NCBI RefSeq assembly: GCF_001194135.2 | Contig: NC_068987.1 | Location: forward strand, 68,163,024 to 68,197,098 | Length of the DNA stretch: 34,075 bases | Origin: Octopus bimaculoides | Taxonomy: Eukaryota | Direction of reading: 5' to 3' | In this document: piece by piece, positions 467-32,960 of the stretch | Numbering within the stretch: the first letter of the stretch is position 1 | Layout of the letters: every line of letters starts with the position of its first letter | The notes under the pieces: model-generated | What the model saw: the letters and a program-made list of their open reading frames with translations, nothing else | The model's database searches: none | What the model was told of the DNA's origin: nothing | Position numbers and translations under genes: made by a program

Positions 467-1620
467 TAGTGGTTGGATAAAATAATGGAAACAACTTAAA
501 ATTTCAAACAAATTTATTTTAATATGGGGCCCGAATTCTACGAGGTATGGAATCGTACAAAGTTTGATTTGCTTCCAAAGGAATATTTGTCCTTTCTTCA
601 GCTAAAACAATCTCCAGTTCTTGTAGTGATAATGTTGGAGGATATCGACTCTTTACATATTTTTCTAAAATGCACCATAAATTCTCAATAATATTGATAT
701 CTAGTGGCCAGATAAGCTATTCAACTTCACTAGAATGTTCCTCGTGCCATTCAGTAACAACTTTAGCTGTGTGAATTGGTGCATTATCATTCTGAAAGAT
801 TGCATTTCCCTCCGGAAACAGTTCTACAACCATAGGATGAATTTGAGCAGATAAATGCTTAAATAGACTTGACTATTAATTCTGCCATGAAGGGAAACCA
901 TTGGGCCGGCGGATTTCCAAGATATAGTCCCCTAGATCATCACAGATCCTCATCCATGTTTAATAGCTGGATGAAGACAGCAAGGCTTAAATGCTTCTTT
1001 TCGCTGTCTCCACACGTATACTCGGCGGGCGGTCATAAATAAGGGAACCGATAACTCGTCCGAGAAAATAACATTTTTCCACTGCTCTCGGGGCCAATTC
1101 TGTAGGTTTTTACTCCACACCAAACGCTTTGCAGCATTTGTTCTTGAAATCAGTGGTTTTCTGATTGCAGCCCTCCCGTGAAATCCGGCTTTGTGCAGCT
1201 CCCGGCGAACAGTTTTCGTGGAAACTGGGTTCTCGAGGTGGTCATTAAGCTCGGCAGTAATTTTGGGAGTTGTATTTTGTGATCTTTTCTAACAATTCGC
1301 GGAAGAGTTCGACGGTCCCTATCTGAAAGATTTGGTTTTCTTCCGGAGTTTTGTTCCGACGAGGAGGTTTTTCCTTCTAAAAGGCTGTCATTACTTCCAA
1401 GACAATACTTCTTGATACACCAAACATTTTGGATGTGTTCGTTATGCTAGCACCTGCCATTCGAGCACCAACAAGTTAACCTCTTTCTAACGAATTTTAA
1501 TTACCATTTTTCTTATGATATCTGGAAAGAAACAGCAATTTTGGGAAAACATATTAAGCACCACTAATAATAAAGAACAAAACATAAAAATAAATCAGCT
1601 TTGGACAGTTTTATAGATAT
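467..1620 (-). mobile_element. Degenerate Tc1-type DNA transposon (probable DD36E/Incomer-like)
   Basis: TA followed by TAGTGGTTGGATAAAATAATGGAAACA at 467, a Tc1-like CAGTG terminus with C>T. Transposase remnant inside. The second TIR is not visible before the gap at 1640. Confidence 0.85.
519..1507 (-). pseudogene. Tc1-family transposase pseudogene (HTH + DDE)
   Basis: Manual translation: LVGARMAGASITNTSKMFGVSRS..SGRKPNLSDRDRR..VSTKTVRRELHKAGFHGRAAIRKPLIS..WKNVIFSDE..FQNDNAPIHTAKVVTEWHEEHSSEVE*LIWPLDINIIENLW..LYDSIPRRIRAPY*; contains stops, frameshifts and deletions. Confidence 0.9.
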
Positions 1621-10239: not shown

Positions 10240-11060
10240 AGGTGTAGTCAGTCATTGGCACACATTAGGACTTTCCACTCATTTCTCGCTTTAGCCGCTA
10301 GAAGTATTTCTCTCTTTAGCCGCAATAAGTCGTTCTTCGCCGTTTCCTTTCCCGCTTTTCACCTTGTAAGGTGTTAAGTAGCAGGCATTGTTGAAAGTCA
10401 TCATTGGGTGGTGTTATATTTGGTGACCAATCCATCTCAGCTGGCTTTCATTTATCCTTGTGATCATTTGCTTTACGTTAGCCATTTGGTACAATGCATC
10501 AGGTCACATGTGTGAAAAGTGTTCACCATGGATCCTTTACCGATTCGTATTTGTACCCATGTCTGGTGTCCATATGTAAAAATCAGAAGACATAGAGTTT
10601 TGTATGTCTTTATCTTCGTTGTTGGGCTAATGTCAGACGACATTGCTCTACATGCCGCTCTCCTGTCGATGATGTCAATGTCTGAGTTGTGAGAAAGATC
10701 AGCTACAATTGATCCAAGGTGAGTGAATTTATCAACCCTACATAGCTGCTTTCTATTTTCCTGAGACACCTGTTGTTTCGTTTATATTTATATTAATGGC
10801 GATGTACTTTGTCGTAGATTCGATTATTTCTAGCCCAGTCTTTGTTTCTTGCATGACACGATGCAATTATCCCTGTGATTCAATGAAGCTAGGAACAAAG
10901 ATAGGTCAACTTATGTGACTCATATGTGAATTTCATCCTCTGCATGAGGTGCAATTTTCATCACATGATCCATGACTACCAAAAATAGATAAGGTGCTAA
11001 GGTATTACCTTGTAGAATTCCACACTGAGGTATGAAGCCAAGGGACTGTTTTCCATTAAA
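10240..11060 (-). mobile_element. RTE-clade LINE, degenerate 3' ORF2 fragment (reverse transcriptase)
   Basis: Minus-strand GILQGNTLAPYLFLVVMDHVM (RT motif), VDKFTHLGS..TKIKTYKTLCLLIFTYGHQTW, RINESQLRWIGH, ..AAKARNEWK; stops and frameshifts. Confidence 0.8.
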
Positions 11061-11186
11061 AAGGGCATATGCTTTTTGACGTCTAACTGCCGATGCTATC
11101 TTCGATGGTATACCTGTCGTTCAAGAAACCGAAACAGCGGTACAGAGAGAGAAAGAGAGGAGAGACAAGGGGTAAGAAATGATGAT

Positions 11187-11553
11187 AAGTGGTAAAAAGT
11201 TCGCTTTCCAGACACATGGTTCCGGATTAAATCCCACTGCGTGGCACCATGTTTAGGTAGATTCTGGAATAACCTCAGGCCGACCAAAGCATTGTGAGTT
11301 GATTTCGAGGACAGAGACTGAAAGAAGCCGTTGTGTAAATATGTATATACACATGCAAATGTCTGTATATGTCTTCGTGCCCATATTTGTTCCCCTCCAA
11401 ATGGTGTTGGTGTGTTCACGGTTCCTGCAACTTCACAGAGACCGACAGAATAAGTGCAAGACTTAAAAAGCACTAAGTACCGGTGTCAGTTCGTTCGATT
11501 AAAGTTCTTCAAAGCAGTGCCCAAGAAAGGTCGCAGTTAAATGACTGAGACAA
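11187..11553 (+). mobile_element. Octopus-type tRNA-derived SINE (family A), near full length
   Basis: tRNA-like head GGTAAAAAGTTCGC..CACATGGTTCCGGATTAAATCCC, body GGCCGACCAAAGCATTGTGAGT..CTGAAAGAAGCC, internal TA/TG-rich tract, 3' GACCGACAGAATAAGT..AATGACTGAGACAA; collinear with 25105-25491. Confidence 0.8.
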
Positions 11554-11707
11554 ATGTATATAAATGTATATATAAAATGTAATTTAGATTCAGTTGAATT
11601 AGGTACTTAAATTGAGGCACATTGTTAGGACGAACTCATTTGCACACTGAAACAATATAAGCTGAGTATGAAACTCTACAGAATCTTTTCCATTCTTTTG
11701 TACCATT

Positions 11708-13135
11708 TCATAAATTTTCTCGTTTTTGCCTCACCGCCAGCTGATCTGGGCGATCGACTCCGCCTATCCCTTCATTGTATGAAACAAAAACACTCGGTTT
11801 CATTATGACATTACCGCCCGCATCTTGTTTCCTAGTGTCCTTCATGCTTTCAGAATGCATTGTGGATAACATACAGACGTTTTTCTTGTCACGCCACGCT
11901 AGAAAGAGAATACCACTATCGGTGCATGGGTAGGGTGTTTCCCACTTTCGAAGTTTCATCTTGTGAAGATCGGGTGGTATGTTTTTTCTATGCGTCTTCA
12001 CAGTCCCAAGGGCATTAGTGCTCCTCACCTACAGCTGCAGGAAGAGGTATGGACTGCAAAACCAGTTCTCCATACAAGTATTGTAGCCTTCGTCAAACAA
12101 GTTTTCATTCAGCGACAACACATCAGTTGATGCTGGAATAGGCATTGGAAGATCCAATCTGTCCTGATCGGTGTAGATTATGTAATTCCACGTGTACCCA
12201 CAGGCTTTACCAATTGACAGGCATACTTTATAAACATTGACTCCAAAGCGGGCGCATTAATCGGGTTGTATTATTTGAATCGGAGCCTCCCCTTGAATTT
12301 CTGCAAATTCTCGTCCGTACAAATGTCCTGTGTAGGAACATACACTGTTTTGAAATTTTCAGCCACTTCGTCAACGATAGTTCTTGCCTGAGTTGAAATG
12401 TAGATTTCGAAGAAGCGCCAAAAATCGATCACGTGGCATCGTTTCCAGAAAGAAAGTTGTCGACGTGGCTGGATCCCGATTCCAATATGACGCCAGGATC
12501 GGTTTCTTCACGATGCCCATCAGCATCAGTAGGGCAATCAGAACCTTGATTTTGTACTCTCTGGTTGGAAACGGATCACCGCCACGCCCAGATCTGACAT
12601 TCTGGGGTGGTTTTCAGCATAGTCATTCGTTTCATCCGTTATATATTGGAACATTTCATCCGTCAAAAACTCGTAGAAGATTCCCAATGGCGAACATCCA
12701 TGTTCAAGGTTTACCTTTACGCCAGACATACCAGTGAATCCGTGCAGTCGGACGAAATTGTCTCTCGCTCGCCACACGACATTCCGTTGTCCAGGGCCAT
12801 TCACCGCTGCTCGCTTGTACTTTTAATTCACCGGAATATCATCTTCGCTATCGGAATCATCTGATTCTGAACTACGAAAATACCCACTCTCCGAGTCACC
12901 GTCCGAACTGGAAGAAACAACTAGCGAGGTAGTGGAACTTGGTGTAGCTTGGCGAGACGACCATAAATTCGATGAAACAGGACACGACGACGAAGTTGAG
13001 GGAGCCGGAGTAGTAGGACGCGGTGATGAAGTTAACGGAGCCGGAGTGGCAGGACGCGACGATCGTAAATTCGATGAAACAAGACGCGACGACGAAGTTG
13101 ACAGGACCGGTGTGGAAGAACCAGACTATTGGGTT
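11708..13135 (-). pseudogene. piggyBac (PGBD/DDE_Tnp_1_7-type) transposase pseudogene
   Basis: SPLGIFYEFLTDEMFQYITDETNDYA; LMGIVKKPILASYW; MPRDRFLALLRNLHFN; PTQDICTDE..KFKGRLRFK*YNP; ENWFCSP; LAWRDKKNVCMLSTMH..KPSVFVSYNEGIGGVDRPDQ; stops and frameshifts. Confidence 0.9.
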
Positions 13136-16719: not shown

Positions 16720-16802
16720 NNNNNNNNNNCTAGAAATAAGAGCTAAACCGTCTTTTGGCGACACATTGCAAACTGCTGTTTATATTTTTTTCTATGTGTG
16801 TG

Positions 16803-16837
<35 letters not shown>

Positions 16838-16905
16838 ACGTGTGTGTGTGCGTGTGTGTGTGTGCGTGTGTGTGTGCGTGTGTGCGTGCGTGTGTGTGTG
16901 TGCTT
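16630..16905. repeat. (CATA)n-(TA)n-gap-(TG)n microsatellites
   Basis: Directly visible. Confidence 0.85.
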
Positions 16906-17679
16906 GCGTGCTTCAGTACAGCTGTAGGATTGCAGGTCACATTTAGACATTCAGTTGGTAATGTTTCTGTTGTGGCTGCAGTTGTTGGTTTTGGTGCTGA
17001 AACCTACGTTAATATTGAAGAAGCGGACTCTGCCTGACCAGCATTCCAAATGTGGCCATCGCATCTATTTTCATATATAAGACCTCATTATCTGCCGTAC
17101 ATTTTCAATCTAAGACATGTCATAGCTCTTCTTCACTATTACCCTGCGTTTCAAAACGAAAATTAAAATATATGCGCGCATATAAATAGAGGTAGTGTTG
17201 CTCCTACTTTCTATTTACTTTTCTTCCGCATTATATCCTTTCAGGTGGTATTTTACTAACATTTACCATCACTACGACTATGTGTTAAGGCTCTAATTTC
17301 ATGACCACATATTACACATATGTGAGAGGAAAACAAATGCAGTTTTCTTGAAAATTACTTATGCTTGTTCATTCCCCATAATTTTCAAAAATATATTCTG
17401 TTAATTAAATTTTGAAGTAGTAGTCTATATATTTCGACTCGTCAACGGTGCCAATGAAAAAACTGAATTTGAAATGCGAGTAAACTTCGAGCTTACCTCG
17501 CTCCTATTTCATCAGGCCAATCGATTATATAACGCTTTCCTCGCTGGCCGTTCAATAAAAAGTCGTGAGTGATATAAGAGATGTAAAAAACAAATTGAAT
17601 ATTGAATTCAGAAGTGAGTTCTCGATTTGTCATATCCTCACATAGGTTTAAATATAGCTCCGAGGAGGAGGGGCGAATT

Positions 17680-19061
17680 ACTTCCTCGAAAGTTCCAAGG
17701 GAGGGACGGAGGGGAGCAACTACTACGTGGAAAGTTACAAGGAAGGGGAGGAGCGGGAGGGGGCGAATTACTTCCTAGAAAGTTCCAAGGAGGGGAAGGA
17801 GGGGATGAATTACTTCCTGGAAATATCCAAGGAAGGGGGAGGGGAATTATTTCCTGGAAAGGTCCGAGGTTGGAGAGGAAATACTTCCGTGAAAGTTCGA
17901 AGGGACGGGAGGAGAGGGGAATCACTTCCTAGAAGTTCCGAGGAGGGGGGAAGTGATTGTCTTCCTGGAAAGTTCCGAGGACTTGCTTGAAAGTTCCGAA
18001 GAGTGGAATTCCTGGGAAGTTCCGAGGATGAGAAACTTCCTGGATAAATCAGAGAATGGGGATTCCTGGAAACTCCCGTTGTCTTGGAAAATTCCGAGGA
18101 GGACACGTCCGGGAAAGTTCCGATGAAGAGCTACTTCCTGGAAAGTTCCGATGAAGAGCTACTTCCTGGAAAGTTCAGAGTATAAGCAACTTCCTGAAAG
18201 GTATCGAGGACGGATGATGGGACTTCCTGGAAAGCTCCTAGGATAGAACTTCCTGAAAAGTCCCGAAGATGGCATTTCATGGAAAGTTCCGATTTCCTGA
18301 GAAGTCCCGATGACTGTACTTCCTGGAAAGTTCCGAGGTATGGGACTTCCTGGAAAGTTCCTAGACTGTCATATCCTGGAAATTTCTGAGGATGAGCTAC
18401 TTCCTGGAAAGTTTCGAGGATGGGTTTCTTCCTAAGAAGTTCCGATGATGGGACTCATTGGAAAGTTCCGAGGATGGGACTTCCTGGAAAGTTCCGGGCA
18501 ATTACTAGAAAGTTCTGAGGACTTTGTGGAAAGTTCCGAGGCTCAACTATTTTGTGGAATTTTCCCGATGACTTCCTGGGAAGCTCCGAGATTTTTTTGG
18601 AAAGTTCCGGGCACTTCCTGGACAGTTACAGAGATCGGTTACTTCCTAGGAAGTTTCGGGAATAGGCTACTTAGTGGAAAGTTTCGAGGAAGGGGCTTTC
18701 TGAAAAGTTCCGAGGGTGGTACTTCATGGAAAGTTATGAGGACTTCCTGGAAAGTTCCGATCCTTTTCTGGAAGGTTCCAAGGGTGGTACTTCCTTGGAC
18801 GTTCCGAAGATTTCCTGGAATGTTCCGGATATGGGTTACCCACTGGAAAGTTCCGAGGAAGGGGCTTCCAGGAAAGTTCCGGTGATTGGTTACTTCCTGG
18901 AAAGTTCTGATGATGAGCTGCTTCTTGGAAATTTTCGAGGATGGTACTTCTTGGAAAGTTCCTAGGACTTCCTGGGACGTTCCGAGGATGGGACTTCATG
19001 GAAAATCCTGAGGACTTCCTAGAACGTTCCGAGGATGAACTAATGCCTGGAAAGTTACGAG
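17680..19061 (+). repeat. Variable-spacer tandem array, about 51 copies of core ACTTCCTGGAAAGTTCCGAGG
   Basis: Cores counted by hand; near-perfect copies at 17960, 18133, 18318, 18345, 18479, 18742, 18892. Periods are 34-48 bp for the first eight units and 18-33 bp afterwards (21, 26 and 28 common). Confidence 0.92.
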
Positions 19062-19729
19062 AATGATACCATTTTTGCTTCGAGTTAAAAATGAATTATT
19101 TCAAATTCTGTGAAAGAGAAGATATTGTCATGTACATATACTCTTATATACATATATACATATATATATATACATACTTCACACGCGTATACACATACAT
19201 ACATACATACATACATACATACATACACACATAGTGGCTGCTTTCTCGAATACGAGCAAAGTCATTGCTAGAAAGAATCATTGAAACGAGTGAGTGATGA
19301 CTCAGTGTCAGGCCCTTGTATGACTCGTGAGGCTGGTAAAAGACTTTCACATTCTATTGCATGGTGCACAGCACAGCTGGTTGGCTGAAGTAATAGGTGC
19401 TACAGTATGAAGTCTTTTGTCATGCCATTTCAATCCTCCAAATGAATGGCACACCTTTCCACAGGTCGCACATGTTCTGTTGTGAATAATAGCCGTATCA
19501 CAATTTAAATTTGGTTAATTCCTGTGAGTTCTCTCATGGCCAAACAGGTATGCATAACTTAAGTATTTCTTGCCACAAATCCTTCATTTTCTACGAGTTC
19601 ATTCTTTCTAAGCCTTCTCTTGATCTTCTCGTGCTTCATTCTCTCTCTCTCTTTCAAACTTCAAACAACTCTTTTCCTCAGTCCATTTCGGTCTTTTGTC
19701 TCCCTCTCCCAATCAACAACTGAAGCTCC

Positions 19730-26107: not shown

Positions 26108-26937
26108 NNNNNNNNNNNNNNNNNNNNNNNNNNNNNNNNNNNNNNNNNNNNNNNNNNNNNNNNNNNNNNNNNNNNNNNNNNNNNNNNNNNNNNNNNNNNN
26201 NNNNNNNNNNNNNNNNNNNNNNNNNNNNNNNNNNNNNNNNNNNNNNNNNNNNNNNNNNNNNNNNNNNNNNNNNNNNNNNNNNNNNNNNNNNNNNNNNNNN
26301 NNNNNNNNNNNNNNNNNNNNNNNNNNNNNNNNNNNNNNNNNNNNNNNNNNNNNNNNNNNNNNNNNNNNNNNNNNNNNNNNNNNNNNNNNNNNNNNNNNNN
26401 NNNNNNNNNNNNNNNNNNNNNNNNNNNNNNNNNNNNNNNNNNNNNNNNNNNNNNNNNNNNNNNNNNNNNNNNNNNNNNNNNNNNNNNNNNNNNNNNNNNN
26501 NNNNNNNNNNNNNNNNNNNNNNNNNNNNNNNNNNNNNNNNNNNNNNNNNNNNNNNNNNNNNNNNNNNNNNNNNNNNNNNNNNNNNNNNNNNNNNNNNNNN
26601 NNNNNNNNNNNNNNNNNNNNNNNNNNNNNNNNNNNNNNNNNNNNNNNNNNNNNNNNNNNNNNNNNNNNNNNNNNNNNNNNNNNNNNNNNNNNNNNNNNNN
26701 NNNNNNNNNNNNNNNNNNNNNNNNNNNNNNNNNNNNNNNNNNNNNNNNNNNNNNNNNNNNNNNNNNNNNNNNNNNNNNNNNNNNNNNNNNNNNNNNNNNN
26801 NNNNNNNNNNNNNNNNNNNNNNNNNNNNNNNNNNNNNNNNNNNNNNNNNNNNNNNNNNNNNNNNNNNNNNNNNNNNNNNNNNNNNNNNNNNNNNNNNNNN
26901 NNNNNNNNNNNNNNNNNNNNNNNNNNNNNNNNNNNNN

Positions 26938-27227
26938 AAACCAGACAGTGTTTTTAAAAAACACCTACACAGATTGCACCTCTGATTTGCACTACCAATA
27001 CCTGCAAGTAAGTTCTGCTCATTGTGGATCCTAACATGTCTTTTAAGACCCCCATTGGATTTGCAAACCCTCTGGCACACACCACATTCAAACGTGTGCA
27101 CAGACATATAATCAGAATAGCTGGATGAGGTTTGTTTTCCATGGGCTCGCAGGTGAGATTTGAGGCCAGCCAAGGACAGACATGGTCTGTCACAGACTGT
27201 GCACACAAAAAGGTCCTTGTCATTCAT
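26938..27227 (-). other. Three tandem C2H2-type zinc fingers, truncated by a gap (probably a LINE ORF2 C-terminus)
   Basis: MNDKDLFVCTVCDRPCLSLAGLKSHLRAH..FECGVCQRVCKSNGGLKRHVRIH..QRCNLCRCFLKTLSG[gap]; no TGEKP linkers; upstream is (TATG)n. Confidence 0.7.
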
Positions 27228-30639: not shown

Positions 30640-31090
30640 ATGAACAATAAGAGCAACACGGAGTTCATCAGTTTCTTGAAAGCTGGTGGAGTAGTGAAAG
30701 AATAGGATGTGTTATCCCTGGTTAAGAGAGTGAATCGTTCCCAGAAGGTCAGACAACGTTAAAATGCTAAGTTCAAATCATCGCCCCTGACTCGATAGCG
30801 TCATGCGTGCAGCTGAATATGGTACACACTACATTAGGAAGAGTGGTACACAAGCAGGACCTAGGAGAATCATGTGGCCTCTGTGCTCTCCTGATTTGAA
30901 TTCTTTGGAGAGCTGCCTGTATGGTAGCGGAGGGGAGCACTGCTCTGGCAGTTTTAGCAATGGTTTTGTTTTTACTGGCGATGTCTCAGCTGCTTGGTAG
31001 TGCAAACCTTTGCTGCAGGTGGTATTTGTAATGTCGTTGTAAAGACATTCCAAACATAACCATATGAAATTTATTCCAAAGTGTGTATTT
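30640..31090 (+). mobile_element. Possible very decayed Tc1/mariner-type remnant
   Basis: Only MWPLCSPDLNSLESCL (cf. WPPxSPDLNPLD/IE) is recognisable. Confidence 0.3.
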
Positions 31091-31499: not shown

Positions 31500-32225
31500 A
31501 GTGTCCCAGTCAATTCCCATCTACGCAAGGCCACGATCCTGAATCACCGATACTATGTGGCATACGGCTGACCAACACGAGCTGTCACTACAAGCGGATC
31601 CTCAGAAAGAGAGAGTAGATGATACGCGGGACCTAAGTTATAAAATTGAGTAACATTACCAAACAGTCTGATGGAACGCTCCAGAGTCATACATGTAACA
31701 TGACGTATCCCAGTGTAGTCGTTGGTTGAATGCGAACTCGGACTAATGGTAGCCCATTCTCCGGCGAATCTTTCTCGTACCATAGAATTTCTGGAAGGTC
31801 TTCACGGCCCCGAACAGTGTCCGAGACTCGTAACTATAGCGCAAGACAGAACAGAGAAGACCAGAGACCTGAAAACCTGAAAACCCGAAACTTTATCCTC
31901 TTGTTTAGATATCGGCAGCGTGAAATACTCTTACCCAGTGCGTCCATTATCTGCACTAGCACGTTCAAGTCTTTTTAGAATTTCAGATTCGCAGTTAATG
32001 GTGCTAAGGATCATATTGTCTAAATAAGTGAATTAGTCAATAACTTTGATATTCTCACTCGCAACAGAGACAGACAAGATGGAGTCTCGGGAAGTTAACA
32101 AAAGACTGAATCTTTGCTTTGGCGCAAGAAACTCTAAGACCAAGCGCTTCCGCTTTCTCATTGAGCGTGAAAAGAGCACACTTTAAGCGATCCAGAGATC
32201 TAGCAAGGATAACCGCAACGAGAAC
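31500..32225 (-). mobile_element. RTE-clade LINE, degenerate ORF2 3' fragment
   Basis: AVILARSLDRLKCALFTLNEKAEALGLRVSCAKAKIQSF; VASENIKVID*FTYL; CESEILKRLERA; TGIRHVTCMTLERSIRLFGNV..DPAYHLLSLSEDP; stops and frameshifts. Confidence 0.85.
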
Positions 32226-32960
32226 AATAAGAAAAAGGTGAGAAAAGAAATAAGATAGCGTAAGTGAGGAATACAGCTATCGGTCAGTGGCAAACCAAAC
32301 AATAAAGAAACAACGCCACATTAAATAACAAATAAATCAACACCAATGAAAAGAAGAAGAATAATGAAATTTTAAAAAGCAGGAGAAATATAGGCATAAA
32401 AAAAAAACGAAACCGCGAATCACGAACTTTGACAAGAACAACAAATAAAAAGAAGAACAGCATCAATACTAATAAGAACGACCAGAGGCAATAACTGCAA
32501 CACAATCAGTTGCTGCAATGGAACACGGAGAATGAACGCTAGCAACGTCAGCATTAGGGGCAATGACACTAACGTCAACAGCATGAACAACAGCCGCAGC
32601 GCCAACGGTAGCACAATTCCACAATTACAATACCACAAACAGCGAACAATAGCAAGAACAATAATAAAAAACTACAAAAACAACTGTATTAGAATACCTT
32701 CAATGACAGCACCAACAACCACAACGTTACTAACAAAAAGTATATACAAACAAAACAAAAAAAAAGAAACAACAGTAAGAACCACGACGGCTATGACAGC
32801 GGACGTTGGTGGTGTCGACGTCGATGGCAAAACAAGCTGTCAAAAGAACTGAAGAATTATATATGAAAAATAACAAAAAGACATAACAAAAAAAAAACTG
32901 CAACAAAAAAGACAAAAGAATCAAACAAACAAAAGGGAAAAGAAAAATCTCAGACAAATA
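32225..32960. repeat. A-rich / degenerate (AAC, AGC) low-complexity region
   Basis: Strong strand bias toward A with AAC/CAA/GCA triplets; no coherent ORF. Confidence 0.7.

What the first reader, a model, noticed from the sequence alone, without database searches (positions are those of the whole stretch)
17680..19061. About 51-copy constant-core, variable-spacer array; each core overlaps ETS, STAT and NF-kB-like motifs
Seen: a 21-bp core ACTTCCTGGAAAGTTCCGAGG recurs about 51 times in one orientation. It is built from alternating inverted TTCC/GGAA blocks. Spacers fall into classes (none, ATGGG-like, ATGAGCT-like, G-rich), giving periods such as 21, 26 and 28 bp, which do not keep a reading frame. 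Known: ACTTCCTG is the reverse of the ETS site CAGGAAGT, TTCCTGGAA fits the STAT GAS consensus TTCNNNGAA, and GGAAAGTTCC is kB-like. ATGGG spacers create a second kB-like site, GGGACTTCC (e.g. 18342, 18476). GAAAGTTC is also an HSF-type GAAnnTTC dyad. Inference: no TE feature here explains the array. It could be a repeat-built immune/stress super-enhancer or factor decoy, or the internal array of an unknown mobile element or satellite. The motif overlap could be a chance property of an amplified palindromic seed.
Basis: partly seen in the sequence, partly recalled or inferred. Interest (0 to 1): 0.78.

Follow-up and report, generated by a model that had tools for sequence, protein, structure and literature searches.

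The report
Old decaying minisatellite, not an enhancer
The roughly 51-copy repeat is real, but it behaves like an old, neutrally decaying minisatellite in transposon-rich non-coding DNA, and its resemblance to immune transcription-factor sites follows from the palindromic TTCC/GGAA seed rather than from any detectable selection.

Summary
There are 50 scored cores, one degenerate copy and one partial leading unit. All are on the + strand at 17656-19062, and there are none elsewhere in the window. Periods are 26 (x15), 28 (x12) and 21 (x10), with 34-48 in a G-rich 5' part.

The enhancer/decoy reading meets its own refutation test. Substitutions are spread evenly over the 21 core positions (p=0.25). 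Once G/C sites are allowed to mutate 1.9x faster than A/T sites, nothing is left to explain (p=0.94). STAT, kB and ETS contact positions are no better kept than non-contact ones. Every unit is similarly decayed, about 15% from consensus. Pairwise identity is 0.72 at every distance. The mutation spectrum drives the array (48% GC) toward background GC (predicted 0.31, observed 0.35). Only about half the units keep any one motif, and the strict kB consensus occurs 0 times. Most spacers diverge like the core, and their length classes recur in duplicated multi-unit blocks.

I found no transposon termini, Helitron end, RNA family or recognisable host gene. The surroundings are transposon debris.

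Copy number elsewhere in the source genome could not be tested, so a transposon-borne or dispersed-satellite origin stays open.

Verdict: an ordinary fossil minisatellite, of low interest.

The parts
17656..17679 (+). Partial leading unit: the 3' half of a core (AGCTCCGAGG) plus a G-rich spacer. This is the true left edge of the array.
   Evidence: Read directly from the sequence.
17680..17959 (+). 5' sub-array: 7 cores separated by long purine/G-rich spacers of 13-27 nt, periods 34-48. Four of the seven cores carry CAAGG in place of CGAGG.
   Evidence: Weight-matrix segmentation; TRF periods 42, 90 and 111; spacer composition 54% G; CAAGG variants.
17960..19062 (+). 3' compact sub-array: 43 scored cores plus 1 degenerate copy. 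Spacers are 0, 5 or 7 nt, giving periods 21, 26 and 28. It contains old multi-unit block duplications.
   Evidence: Self-BLAST blocks 18323-18521 vs 18843-19035 (78% over 201 nt) and 18399-18760 vs 18613-18985 (73% over 385 nt).
18318..18338 (+). The only perfect copy of the 21-bp consensus ACTTCCTGGAAAGTTCCGAGG.
   Evidence: 0 mismatches.
18542..18570 (+). Degenerate unit with insertions (CTCAACTATTTTGTGGAATTTTCCCGATG). It brings the count to about 51.
19070..19093 (+). AT-rich hairpin (7-bp stem, 10-nt loop) 8 nt after the last unit. It lies in the flank and is of uncertain relevance.
   Evidence: Palindrome scan. No sub-terminal inverted repeat or CTRR motif is associated with it (sequence).
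16795..16902 (.). (TG)n microsatellite 754 nt upstream of the array. Context only.
   Evidence: TRF.
19133..19233 (.). (ATAC)n-type microsatellite 70 nt downstream of the array. Context only.
   Evidence: TRF.

Best explanation
This is a fossil minisatellite. A 21-bp unit built from inverted TTCC/GGAA blocks, with a short purine-rich junction, was amplified head-to-tail by replication slippage and unequal exchange. The steps included duplications of several units at once. The inverted blocks let a single strand pair out of register with neighbouring units, which favours such slippage. A few junction-length variants (0, 5, 7 and long G-rich) were copied along with the cores, and this produces the look of a constant core with variable spacers. 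Amplification then stopped, and every unit has since drifted independently and neutrally toward the AT-rich background. The ETS, STAT, kB and HSF look-alikes are one coincidence, not four, because all these consensus sites are built on TTCC/GGAA. Shown here: the anatomy, the even decay, the mutation bias, the lack of homogenisation and the excess single-strand folding. Inferred: the slippage mechanism, the neutrality and the absence of present function.
For: Even decay within the core:
- 145 substitutions in 47 cores (14.7% per site) are uniform over the 21 positions (chi-square p=0.25).
- G/C sites change 1.9x as often as A/T sites (Mann-Whitney p=7e-4). After that adjustment chi-square is 10.4 on 19 df, p=0.94.

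No transcription-factor footprint (observed vs expected substitutions):
- STAT contact positions 30 vs 36.6; the NNN positions 22 vs 22.5.
- kB half-sites 42 vs 45; kB centre 19 vs 23.
- ETS core 26 vs 27; ETS flank 29 vs 27.

No sign of maintenance:
- Mismatches per unit have mean 3.3 and variance 2.4, so there is no intact/dead bimodality.
- Pairwise core identity is 0.72 at every lag from 1 to 40. This equals 0.853 squared, the value expected for independent decay from one consensus.
- The GC-to-AT rate is 0.174 and the AT-to-GC rate 0.077. These predict an equilibrium GC of 0.31. The background is 0.35 and the array 0.48.

Spacers and growth:
- Spacer length patterns recur in duplicated blocks.
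- 12 of 15 five-nt spacers diverge 0.20 per site from ATGGG, like the G/C sites of the core.
- Single-stranded DNA from 18100-18999 folds 6.2 sd better than shuffles.

Context:
- The surroundings are transposon debris with no recognisable host gene.
Against: - Pooled spacers of 5 and 7 nt carry 40 substitutions where the core rates predict 23 (Poisson p=0.001). The core is therefore somewhat better kept than the junctions. Most of that excess comes from a few clearly non-homologous spacers.
- The power to detect weak constraint is limited. For the STAT contact positions the 95% interval of observed/expected is 0.55-1.17.
- A perfect palindromic GAS site, TTCCNGGAA, occurs 15 times in the array and 0 times in the other 32.7 kb. 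Opportunistic binding is therefore possible.
- There are no data on chromatin, expression, population variation or orthologous loci.
Confidence: 0.72

Rival explanations
1. The array is the internal tandem-repeat module of a non-autonomous mobile element, or one locus of a dispersed satellite family. In that case it was delivered here by transposition rather than grown in place. Its present state would still be neutral decay.
For: Molluscan genomes are known to spread short satellite-like arrays inside Helentron-type non-autonomous elements and repeat-containing MITEs. In those elements a microsatellite lies next to the array and a palindrome lies in the right flank (PMC7492417; PMC3879986). 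Here an (ATAC)n tract lies 70 nt after the array, a (TG)n tract lies 754 nt before it, and a hairpin sits at 19070-19093. The flat, star-like divergence of the units fits an array that arrived ready-made. The window is dense with transposon fragments.
Against: No sub-terminal inverted repeats of 10 nt or more with at most 1 mismatch were found in either orientation at the expected places. The best inverted match between the flanks, 13 of 14 at 17462 and 19097, is at chance level: 5 of 40 shuffles and 13 of 300 shuffles. No CTRR motif follows the hairpin (sequence). Microsatellites are everywhere in this window, with 91 TRF rows, so their nearness means little. The flanks and the core have no second copy in the 34 kb.
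Confidence: 0.22
2. The array is a repeat-built regulatory element: a homotypic cluster of STAT, Rel, ETS or HSF sites acting as an enhancer or as a sink for those factors.
For: About half the units still hold a consensus site: GAS 26, relaxed kB 23, ACTTCC 23 and GAAnnTTC 29. TTCCNGGAA occurs 15 times in the array and 0 times elsewhere in the window. There is a precedent: a 28-bp human minisatellite next to HRAS1 is reported to bind rel/NF-kB proteins and to activate reporters (titles in the reference list of PMC3464111). The core is somewhat better kept than the pooled spacers.
Against: Contact positions are no better conserved than non-contact positions. All units are equally decayed. The composition is drifting to background. 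The strict kB consensus is absent. Periods of 21, 26 and 28 do not keep sites on one face of the helix. No recognisable host gene lies in the 34 kb. All the motif matches stem from the same TTCC/GGAA blocks.
Confidence: 0.06

Closest known systems
Classical variant-repeat minisatellites (VNTRs), for example the human HRAS1 28-bp minisatellite
   Same: A head-to-tail array of units a few tens of bp long, with interspersed unit variants, one purine/G-rich strand and a non-coding location. The HRAS1 unit is also reported to contain a rel/NF-kB binding sequence (PMC3464111 text and reference list).
   Different: No binding or reporter evidence exists here. The units are far more diverged, about 28% pairwise, whereas the HRAS1 unit as described varies at two positions. 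The unit length itself varies (21, 26, 28). No adjacent gene was found. Length polymorphism among individuals is unknown.
Satellite-like arrays carried by molluscan non-autonomous Helentrons (Cg_HINE) and repeat-containing MITEs (DTC84/pearl)
   Same: A short dispersed-type array in a transposon-rich region, with a microsatellite close to one end of the array. A palindrome within the unit is a likely hotspot for length change, as proposed for DTC84 (PMC3879986 abstract). There is a hairpin in the right flank (PMC7492417).
   Different: The defining sub-terminal inverted repeats and their internal complement were searched for and not found. Whether the flanks are shared with other copies could not be tested.
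Transposon- or repeat-derived clusters of immune transcription-factor sites (from general knowledge: interferon-responsive STAT1 sites in primate MER41 LTRs; promoter monomers in the mouse L1 5' UTR)
   Same: Repeated DNA that supplies many copies of a consensus site such as a GAS element.
   Different: Those cases rest on occupancy and functional data. Here the sequence shows no site-specific constraint, and no functional data can be reached.
11-12-nt (AAAGTTCCTGG)n arrays in a microvirus-like contig and a metagenome contig (L003, L002, L001)
   Same: They contain the same TTCCTGGAA palindrome repeated in tandem.
   Different: The period is 11-12, not 21-28. They lack the CGAGG part of the unit and sit in a prokaryotic-virus context. 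This is convergence on a short palindrome, not homology.

Membership tests
Minisatellite (VNTR-type tandem repeat) | Head-to-tail array of 10-100-bp units in one orientation | tested here: met
   About 51 units of 21-48 bp, all on the + strand.
Minisatellite (VNTR-type tandem repeat) | Array length of roughly 0.1-20 kb at a discrete locus with unique flanks | tested here: met
   1.4 kb at 17656-19062. The flanks are unique within the window.
Minisatellite (VNTR-type tandem repeat) | Interspersed unit variants and multi-unit duplications | tested here: met
   Spacer classes of 0, 5 and 7 nt plus long ones; higher-order TRF periods 44-111; duplicated blocks.
Minisatellite (VNTR-type tandem repeat) | Length polymorphism among individuals | not testable with these tools
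   No population or long-read data are available.
Transposon-borne array (Helentron HINE / pearl / DTC84 type) | 11-12-bp sub-terminal inverted repeats at both ends, with an internal complement in the left flank | tested here: not met
   No inverted match of 10 nt with at most 1 mismatch at the expected places in either orientation. The best flank match is at chance level.
Transposon-borne array (Helentron HINE / pearl / DTC84 type) | Microsatellite adjoining the array, and a palindrome in the right flank | tested here: inconclusive
   (ATAC)n lies 70 nt downstream and (TG)n 754 nt upstream. There is a hairpin at 19070-19093. Microsatellites are ubiquitous in this window, and the hairpin is not preceded by a sub-terminal repeat.
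Transposon-borne array (Helentron HINE / pearl / DTC84 type) | Many genomic copies sharing the same flanks | not testable with these tools
   No collection holding the source genome could be searched by DNA. The protein collections do not cover this genome's non-coding ORFs.
Canonical Helitron | A 3' hairpin followed within about 10-12 nt by CTRR | tested here: not met
   The hairpin at 19070-19093 is AT-rich and no CTRR occurs in the next 20 nt.
Functional homotypic transcription-factor site cluster / repeat-built enhancer | Consensus site present in the units | tested here: met
   GAS 26, TTCCNGGAA 15, relaxed kB 23, ACTTCC 23 and GAAnnTTC 29 matches. The strict kB consensus has 0.
Functional homotypic transcription-factor site cluster / repeat-built enhancer | Contact positions conserved above non-contact positions | tested here: not met
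   The profile is uniform (p=0.25, and p=0.94 after base-type adjustment). Observed counts match expected counts for the STAT, kB and ETS contact sets. Power is limited: the 95% interval for the STAT set is 0.55-1.17.
Functional homotypic transcription-factor site cluster / repeat-built enhancer | Factor occupancy, open chromatin and reporter activity | not testable with these tools
   No functional genomics data are available.
Functional homotypic transcription-factor site cluster / repeat-built enhancer | A plausible target gene nearby | tested here: inconclusive
   Only transposon fragments and two isolated C2H2 finger ORFs are recognisable in the 34 kb. Enhancers can act over longer distances.
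CRISPR array | 23-55-bp repeats separated by unique spacers of similar length, in a prokaryote or virus, usually with cas genes | tested here: not met
   Most spacers are 0-7 nt and fall into recurring classes. The context is a eukaryotic draft assembly with Tc1, piggyBac and reverse-transcriptase fragments.
Coding tandem repeat | A period that is a multiple of 3, keeping one reading frame | tested here: not met
   Periods of 26 and 28 dominate. The long ORFs across the array exist only because the core has no stop codon in any of the six frames.

The most novel reading that the evidence does not exclude
The array was once, or still weakly is, a lineage-specific sink or enhancer for a STAT-, Rel- or ETS-type factor, built by amplifying a single perfect TTCCTGGAA GAS palindrome. 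The modestly better preservation of cores than junctions would then be a remnant of that use.
Probability: 0.05. Interest if true: 0.55.

Novelty: new member of a known kind. Interest (0 to 1): 0.12.

Why it matters
This finding matters little in itself. Its main use is as a worked caution. A repeat unit seeded by TTCC/GGAA palindromes will automatically match the ETS, STAT, NF-kB, NFAT-like and HSF consensus sites all at once, so stacked motif hits in a tandem array are not independent evidence of regulation. A per-position decay profile, corrected for base-specific mutation bias, is a quick way to separate a constrained site cluster from an amplified seed. If the source genome turns out to hold many copies with shared flanks, the unit would be worth adding to that species' repeat library.

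Tried and rejected
Searches outside the window:
- Translated array ORF (18445-18882) against 5.8 billion proteins: no hit.
- Exhaustive HMMER search of 1.84 billion representatives with 18436-18882: one marginal hit, P0003. It is a bacterial glycine/aspartate-rich repeat protein and is judged a chance match.
- Exact look-ups of the array ORF and two other window ORFs: none on record. The protein collections therefore do not cover this genome's non-coding DNA, and their silence says nothing about copy number.
- piggyBac ORF search, meant to reach the same genome or orthologous loci: only two metagenomic hits at 70-72% identity, and the better one could not be traced to a contig.
- Exact 21-mer in metagenome contigs: 0.
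- Two-unit pattern: 0 in prokaryotic genomes. It gave two metagenome contigs and one viral contig, which turned out to be unrelated arrays of 11-12-nt period.
- Literature search for the string: 0 papers. Searches on cephalopod tandem repeats and minisatellites returned nothing relevant.

Structural readings that were rejected:
- Rfam: 0 matches. tRNA scan: 0.
- The long inverted repeats around the array are only TG/CA microsatellites.
- Terminal or sub-terminal inverted repeats and target-site duplications: a 13/14 match with a 5/6 flanking direct repeat was considered and rejected as chance-level and post hoc.
- Helitron 3' end: rejected.
- G-quadruplex motifs with loops of 7 nt or less: none.
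- CRISPR-like and coding-repeat readings: rejected (see the membership test).
- CpG hypermutability: not evident. 30 of 47 cores keep the CpG and 11 of 47 have TG or CA, which is similar to other G/C sites.

Full report
**Observation**

The array is real and far beyond chance.
- The 21-mer ACTTCCTGGAAAGTTCCGAGG with up to 3 mismatches occurs 28 times, all on the + strand between 17680 and 19034. It occurs 0 times in 100 shuffles. Only 18318-18338 is a perfect copy.
- An iterated weight-matrix segmentation finds 50 non-overlapping cores from 17680 to 19062.
- One more degenerate unit lies in 18542-18570, and a partial unit (AGCTCCGAGG, 17656-17665) marks the true left edge.
- No copy exists elsewhere in the 34 kb on either strand.
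- TRF sees the same array with periods 21, 26, 28 and 42, and higher-order periods 44, 47, 56, 68, 90 and 111.

**Anatomy**

The array has two parts.
- 17680-17959 holds 7 cores separated by 13-27-nt purine-rich spacers (54% G), with periods of 34-48. Four of these cores read CAAGG where the consensus has CGAGG.
- 17960-19062 holds 44 units with spacers of 0 nt (x10), 5 nt (x15, consensus ATGGG) and 7 nt (x12, consensus ATGAGCT). These give periods of 21, 26 and 28.

The spacer-length series repeats in blocks. For example, the pattern 7-5-5-0-0 starts at both 18399 and 18641. Self-BLAST also finds old multi-unit duplications: 18323-18521 vs 18843-19035 (78% over 201 nt) and 18399-18760 vs 18613-18985 (73% over 385 nt). 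The spacers are therefore inherited parts of a few unit variants. They are not independently variable inserts.

The core has no stop codon in any of the six frames. This explains the spurious ORFs of up to 149 aa across the array. Periods of 26 and 28 rule out a coding repeat.

**Is any position protected?**

No position stands out.
- In the 47 cores with at most 5 mismatches there are 145 substitutions, or 14.7% per site. The Jukes-Cantor distance to the consensus is 0.16.
- The substitutions are uniform over the 21 positions (chi-square p=0.25).
- The only structure is base type. G/C consensus sites carry 8.9 changes each and A/T sites 4.7 (p=7e-4). After that adjustment the chi-square is 10.4 on 19 df, p=0.94.

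| Position set | Observed | Expected |
|---|---|---|
| STAT contact positions | 30 | 36.6 |
| STAT NNN positions | 22 | 22.5 |
| kB half-sites | 42 | 45 |
| kB centre | 19 | 23 |
| ETS GGAA core | 26 | 27 |
| ETS flank | 29 | 27 |

The three linker positions outside the TTCC/GGAA blocks are, if anything, the best kept. Power is limited: the 95% interval for the STAT contact set is 0.55-1.17 of expectation. Strong constraint is therefore excluded, but weak constraint is not.

**History**

- Mismatches per unit have mean 3.3 and variance 2.4. There is no class of preserved units beside dead ones.
- Mean pairwise core identity is 0.72 at every lag from 1 to 40 units. This equals 0.853 squared, which is what independent decay from a single consensus predicts. 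It shows that no homogenisation has occurred since the amplification.
- GC-to-AT changes run at 0.174 per site and AT-to-GC changes at 0.077. These predict an equilibrium GC of 0.31. The rest of the window is 0.35 and the array 0.48. The array is relaxing toward background composition, which is a neutral signature.
- An octopus calibration is quoted in PMC13282606: distance 0.09 corresponds to about 25 My and 0.2 to about 56 My. If it applied, the burst would be roughly 45 My old. This is inference only, because the source organism was not identified.

**Core versus spacer**

Pooled 5- and 7-nt spacers carry 40 substitutions where the core rates predict 23 (p=0.001). Eleven of the 21 changes in the 5-nt class come from four spacers that are plainly not homologous to ATGGG: AGGAC, ACTGT, CTGTC and ATAGA. 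The 12 spacers with at most 2 differences from ATGGG, a set that still includes ATAGA, diverge 0.20 per site, like the G/C sites of the core. The junction is thus where rearrangement happens. It is not a place of relaxed selection beside a constrained core.

**Motifs**

- Intact matches in the array: TTCNNNGAA 26, relaxed kB GGRRNNYYCC 23, ACTTCC 23, GAAnnTTC 29, GGGACTTCC 3, and the strict kB consensus GGGRNWYYCC 0.
- TTCCNGGAA occurs 15 times in the array and 0 times in the rest of the window.
- All these consensus sites are built on TTCC/GGAA, so their co-occurrence in a unit made of TTCC-T-GGAA-AG-TTCC is one coincidence, not several.
- The same palindrome also forms unrelated 11-12-nt tandem arrays in a microvirus-like contig and in a metagenome contig.

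**Mechanism of growth**

Single-stranded DNA from 18100-18999 folds to -149.9 kcal/mol. Shuffles average -111.7 +/- 6.1, giving z = -6.2. The reason is that TTCC and GGAA blocks of different units can pair. This favours slipped intermediates during replication or repair. I infer, but have not shown, that this drove the amplification and the changes in junction length. A palindrome near the unit junction is proposed as the hotspot for length change in the clam element DTC84 (PMC3879986).

**Context**

The window is a gap-containing eukaryotic draft sequence with 91 TRF rows. Its recognisable contents are:
- a Tc1-type transposase fragment at 953-1288 (-);
- a reverse-transcriptase fragment at 10923-11120 (-);
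- a piggyBac transposase at 11711-12822 (-);
- isolated C2H2 finger ORFs at 19350-19514 (-) and about 26957-27223 (-).

No host gene was recognised. Rfam and the tRNA scan found nothing.

The apparent long inverted repeats around the array are TG/CA microsatellites. The features that define molluscan Helentron-type carriers are sub-terminal inverted repeats with an internal complement, and a right-flank sub-terminal repeat followed by a palindrome (PMC7492417). I searched for them in both orientations and did not find them. The best flank-to-flank inverted match, 13 of 14, is at chance level. The hairpin at 19070-19093 is AT-rich and is not followed by CTRR.

**Related sequences elsewhere**

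None could be reached.
- The translated array finds nothing in two protein collections.
- The window's own ORFs are not on record.
- The piggyBac fragment has only two distant metagenomic relatives.

These collections evidently do not cover the source genome's non-coding DNA. Their silence is uninformative, and genome-wide copy number remains untested. Exact-pattern scans of metagenome, prokaryotic and viral contigs gave no homologous array. The string is absent from the searchable literature.

**Verdict**

- Best explanation (0.72): a fossil, neutrally decaying minisatellite whose transcription-factor look-alikes are by-products of its palindromic seed.
- Rival on origin (0.22): the array is the internal repeat of a mobile element or one locus of a dispersed satellite. 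This is untestable here, and no termini were found.
- Rival on function (0.06): a repeat-built STAT/Rel/ETS site cluster. The nearest precedent is the HRAS1 28-bp minisatellite, reported to bind rel/NF-kB (reference list of PMC3464111). The sequence fails the contact-position test and the rest cannot be tested.

This is a new member of a known kind, and of low interest.

Noticed in passing
L003:4-119 and L003:5022-5137 (IMGVR_UViG_3300025804_000113); probably also L002: A 5.1-kb contig that looks like a microvirus by eye, judged only from its size and compact ORF layout; no family search was run. It carries about 10 tandem copies of an 11-12-nt unit (AAAGTTCCTGG / AAAAGTTCCTGG) in an intergenic stretch. 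The array appears at both contig ends, which suggests the terminal redundancy of a circular genome. It holds the same TTCCTGGAA palindrome as the window array but is unrelated to it.
   Followed up: partly
L001:300-375, 1040-1100, 1690-1795 (Ga0206126_10066496): A metagenome contig with three modules of about 650 nt. Each has short (CTGCAATGCAA)n and (GTTCCTGGAAA/TA)n mini-arrays just upstream of a small ORF. This looks like a repeated operator- or iteron-like arrangement of unknown origin.
   Followed up: no
window 19350-19514 (-) and about 26957-27223 (-): Two isolated C2H2 zinc-finger ORF fragments with the motif CxxC...GLKxHxRxH, each lying beside a (TACA/CATA)n microsatellite. The second matches Pfam zf-C2H2. 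The first sits only about 290 nt from the array. They may be remnants of one transposon or gene family.
   Followed up: partly
window 10476-12822 (-), 500-1450 (-), 30791-30997 (+), 31556-32276 (-): Transposon debris: a frameshifted piggyBac transposase, a reverse-transcriptase fragment, a Tc1-type transposase, a mariner-like C-terminus and a LINE-like 3' part. The piggyBac, reverse-transcriptase and Tc1 calls rest on Pfam. The mariner-like C-terminus and the LINE-like 3' part were judged by eye.
   Followed up: partly
window 17628-17638 and 18367-18377: The 11-mer TGTCATATCCT in the left flank is identical to a spacer-plus-core junction inside the array. My rough estimate of the chance probability is about 0.03. 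It may mark one more badly degraded unit to the left of the array.
   Followed up: partly
window 17618-19095, both strands: The core lacks stop codons in all six frames, so ORFs of 56-149 aa cross the array on both strands. Automatic gene callers could mis-annotate them.
   Followed up: yes
window 26108-26937: An 830-N assembly gap lies directly beside the second zinc-finger fragment. Its content is unknown and it could hide another repeat array.
   Followed up: no
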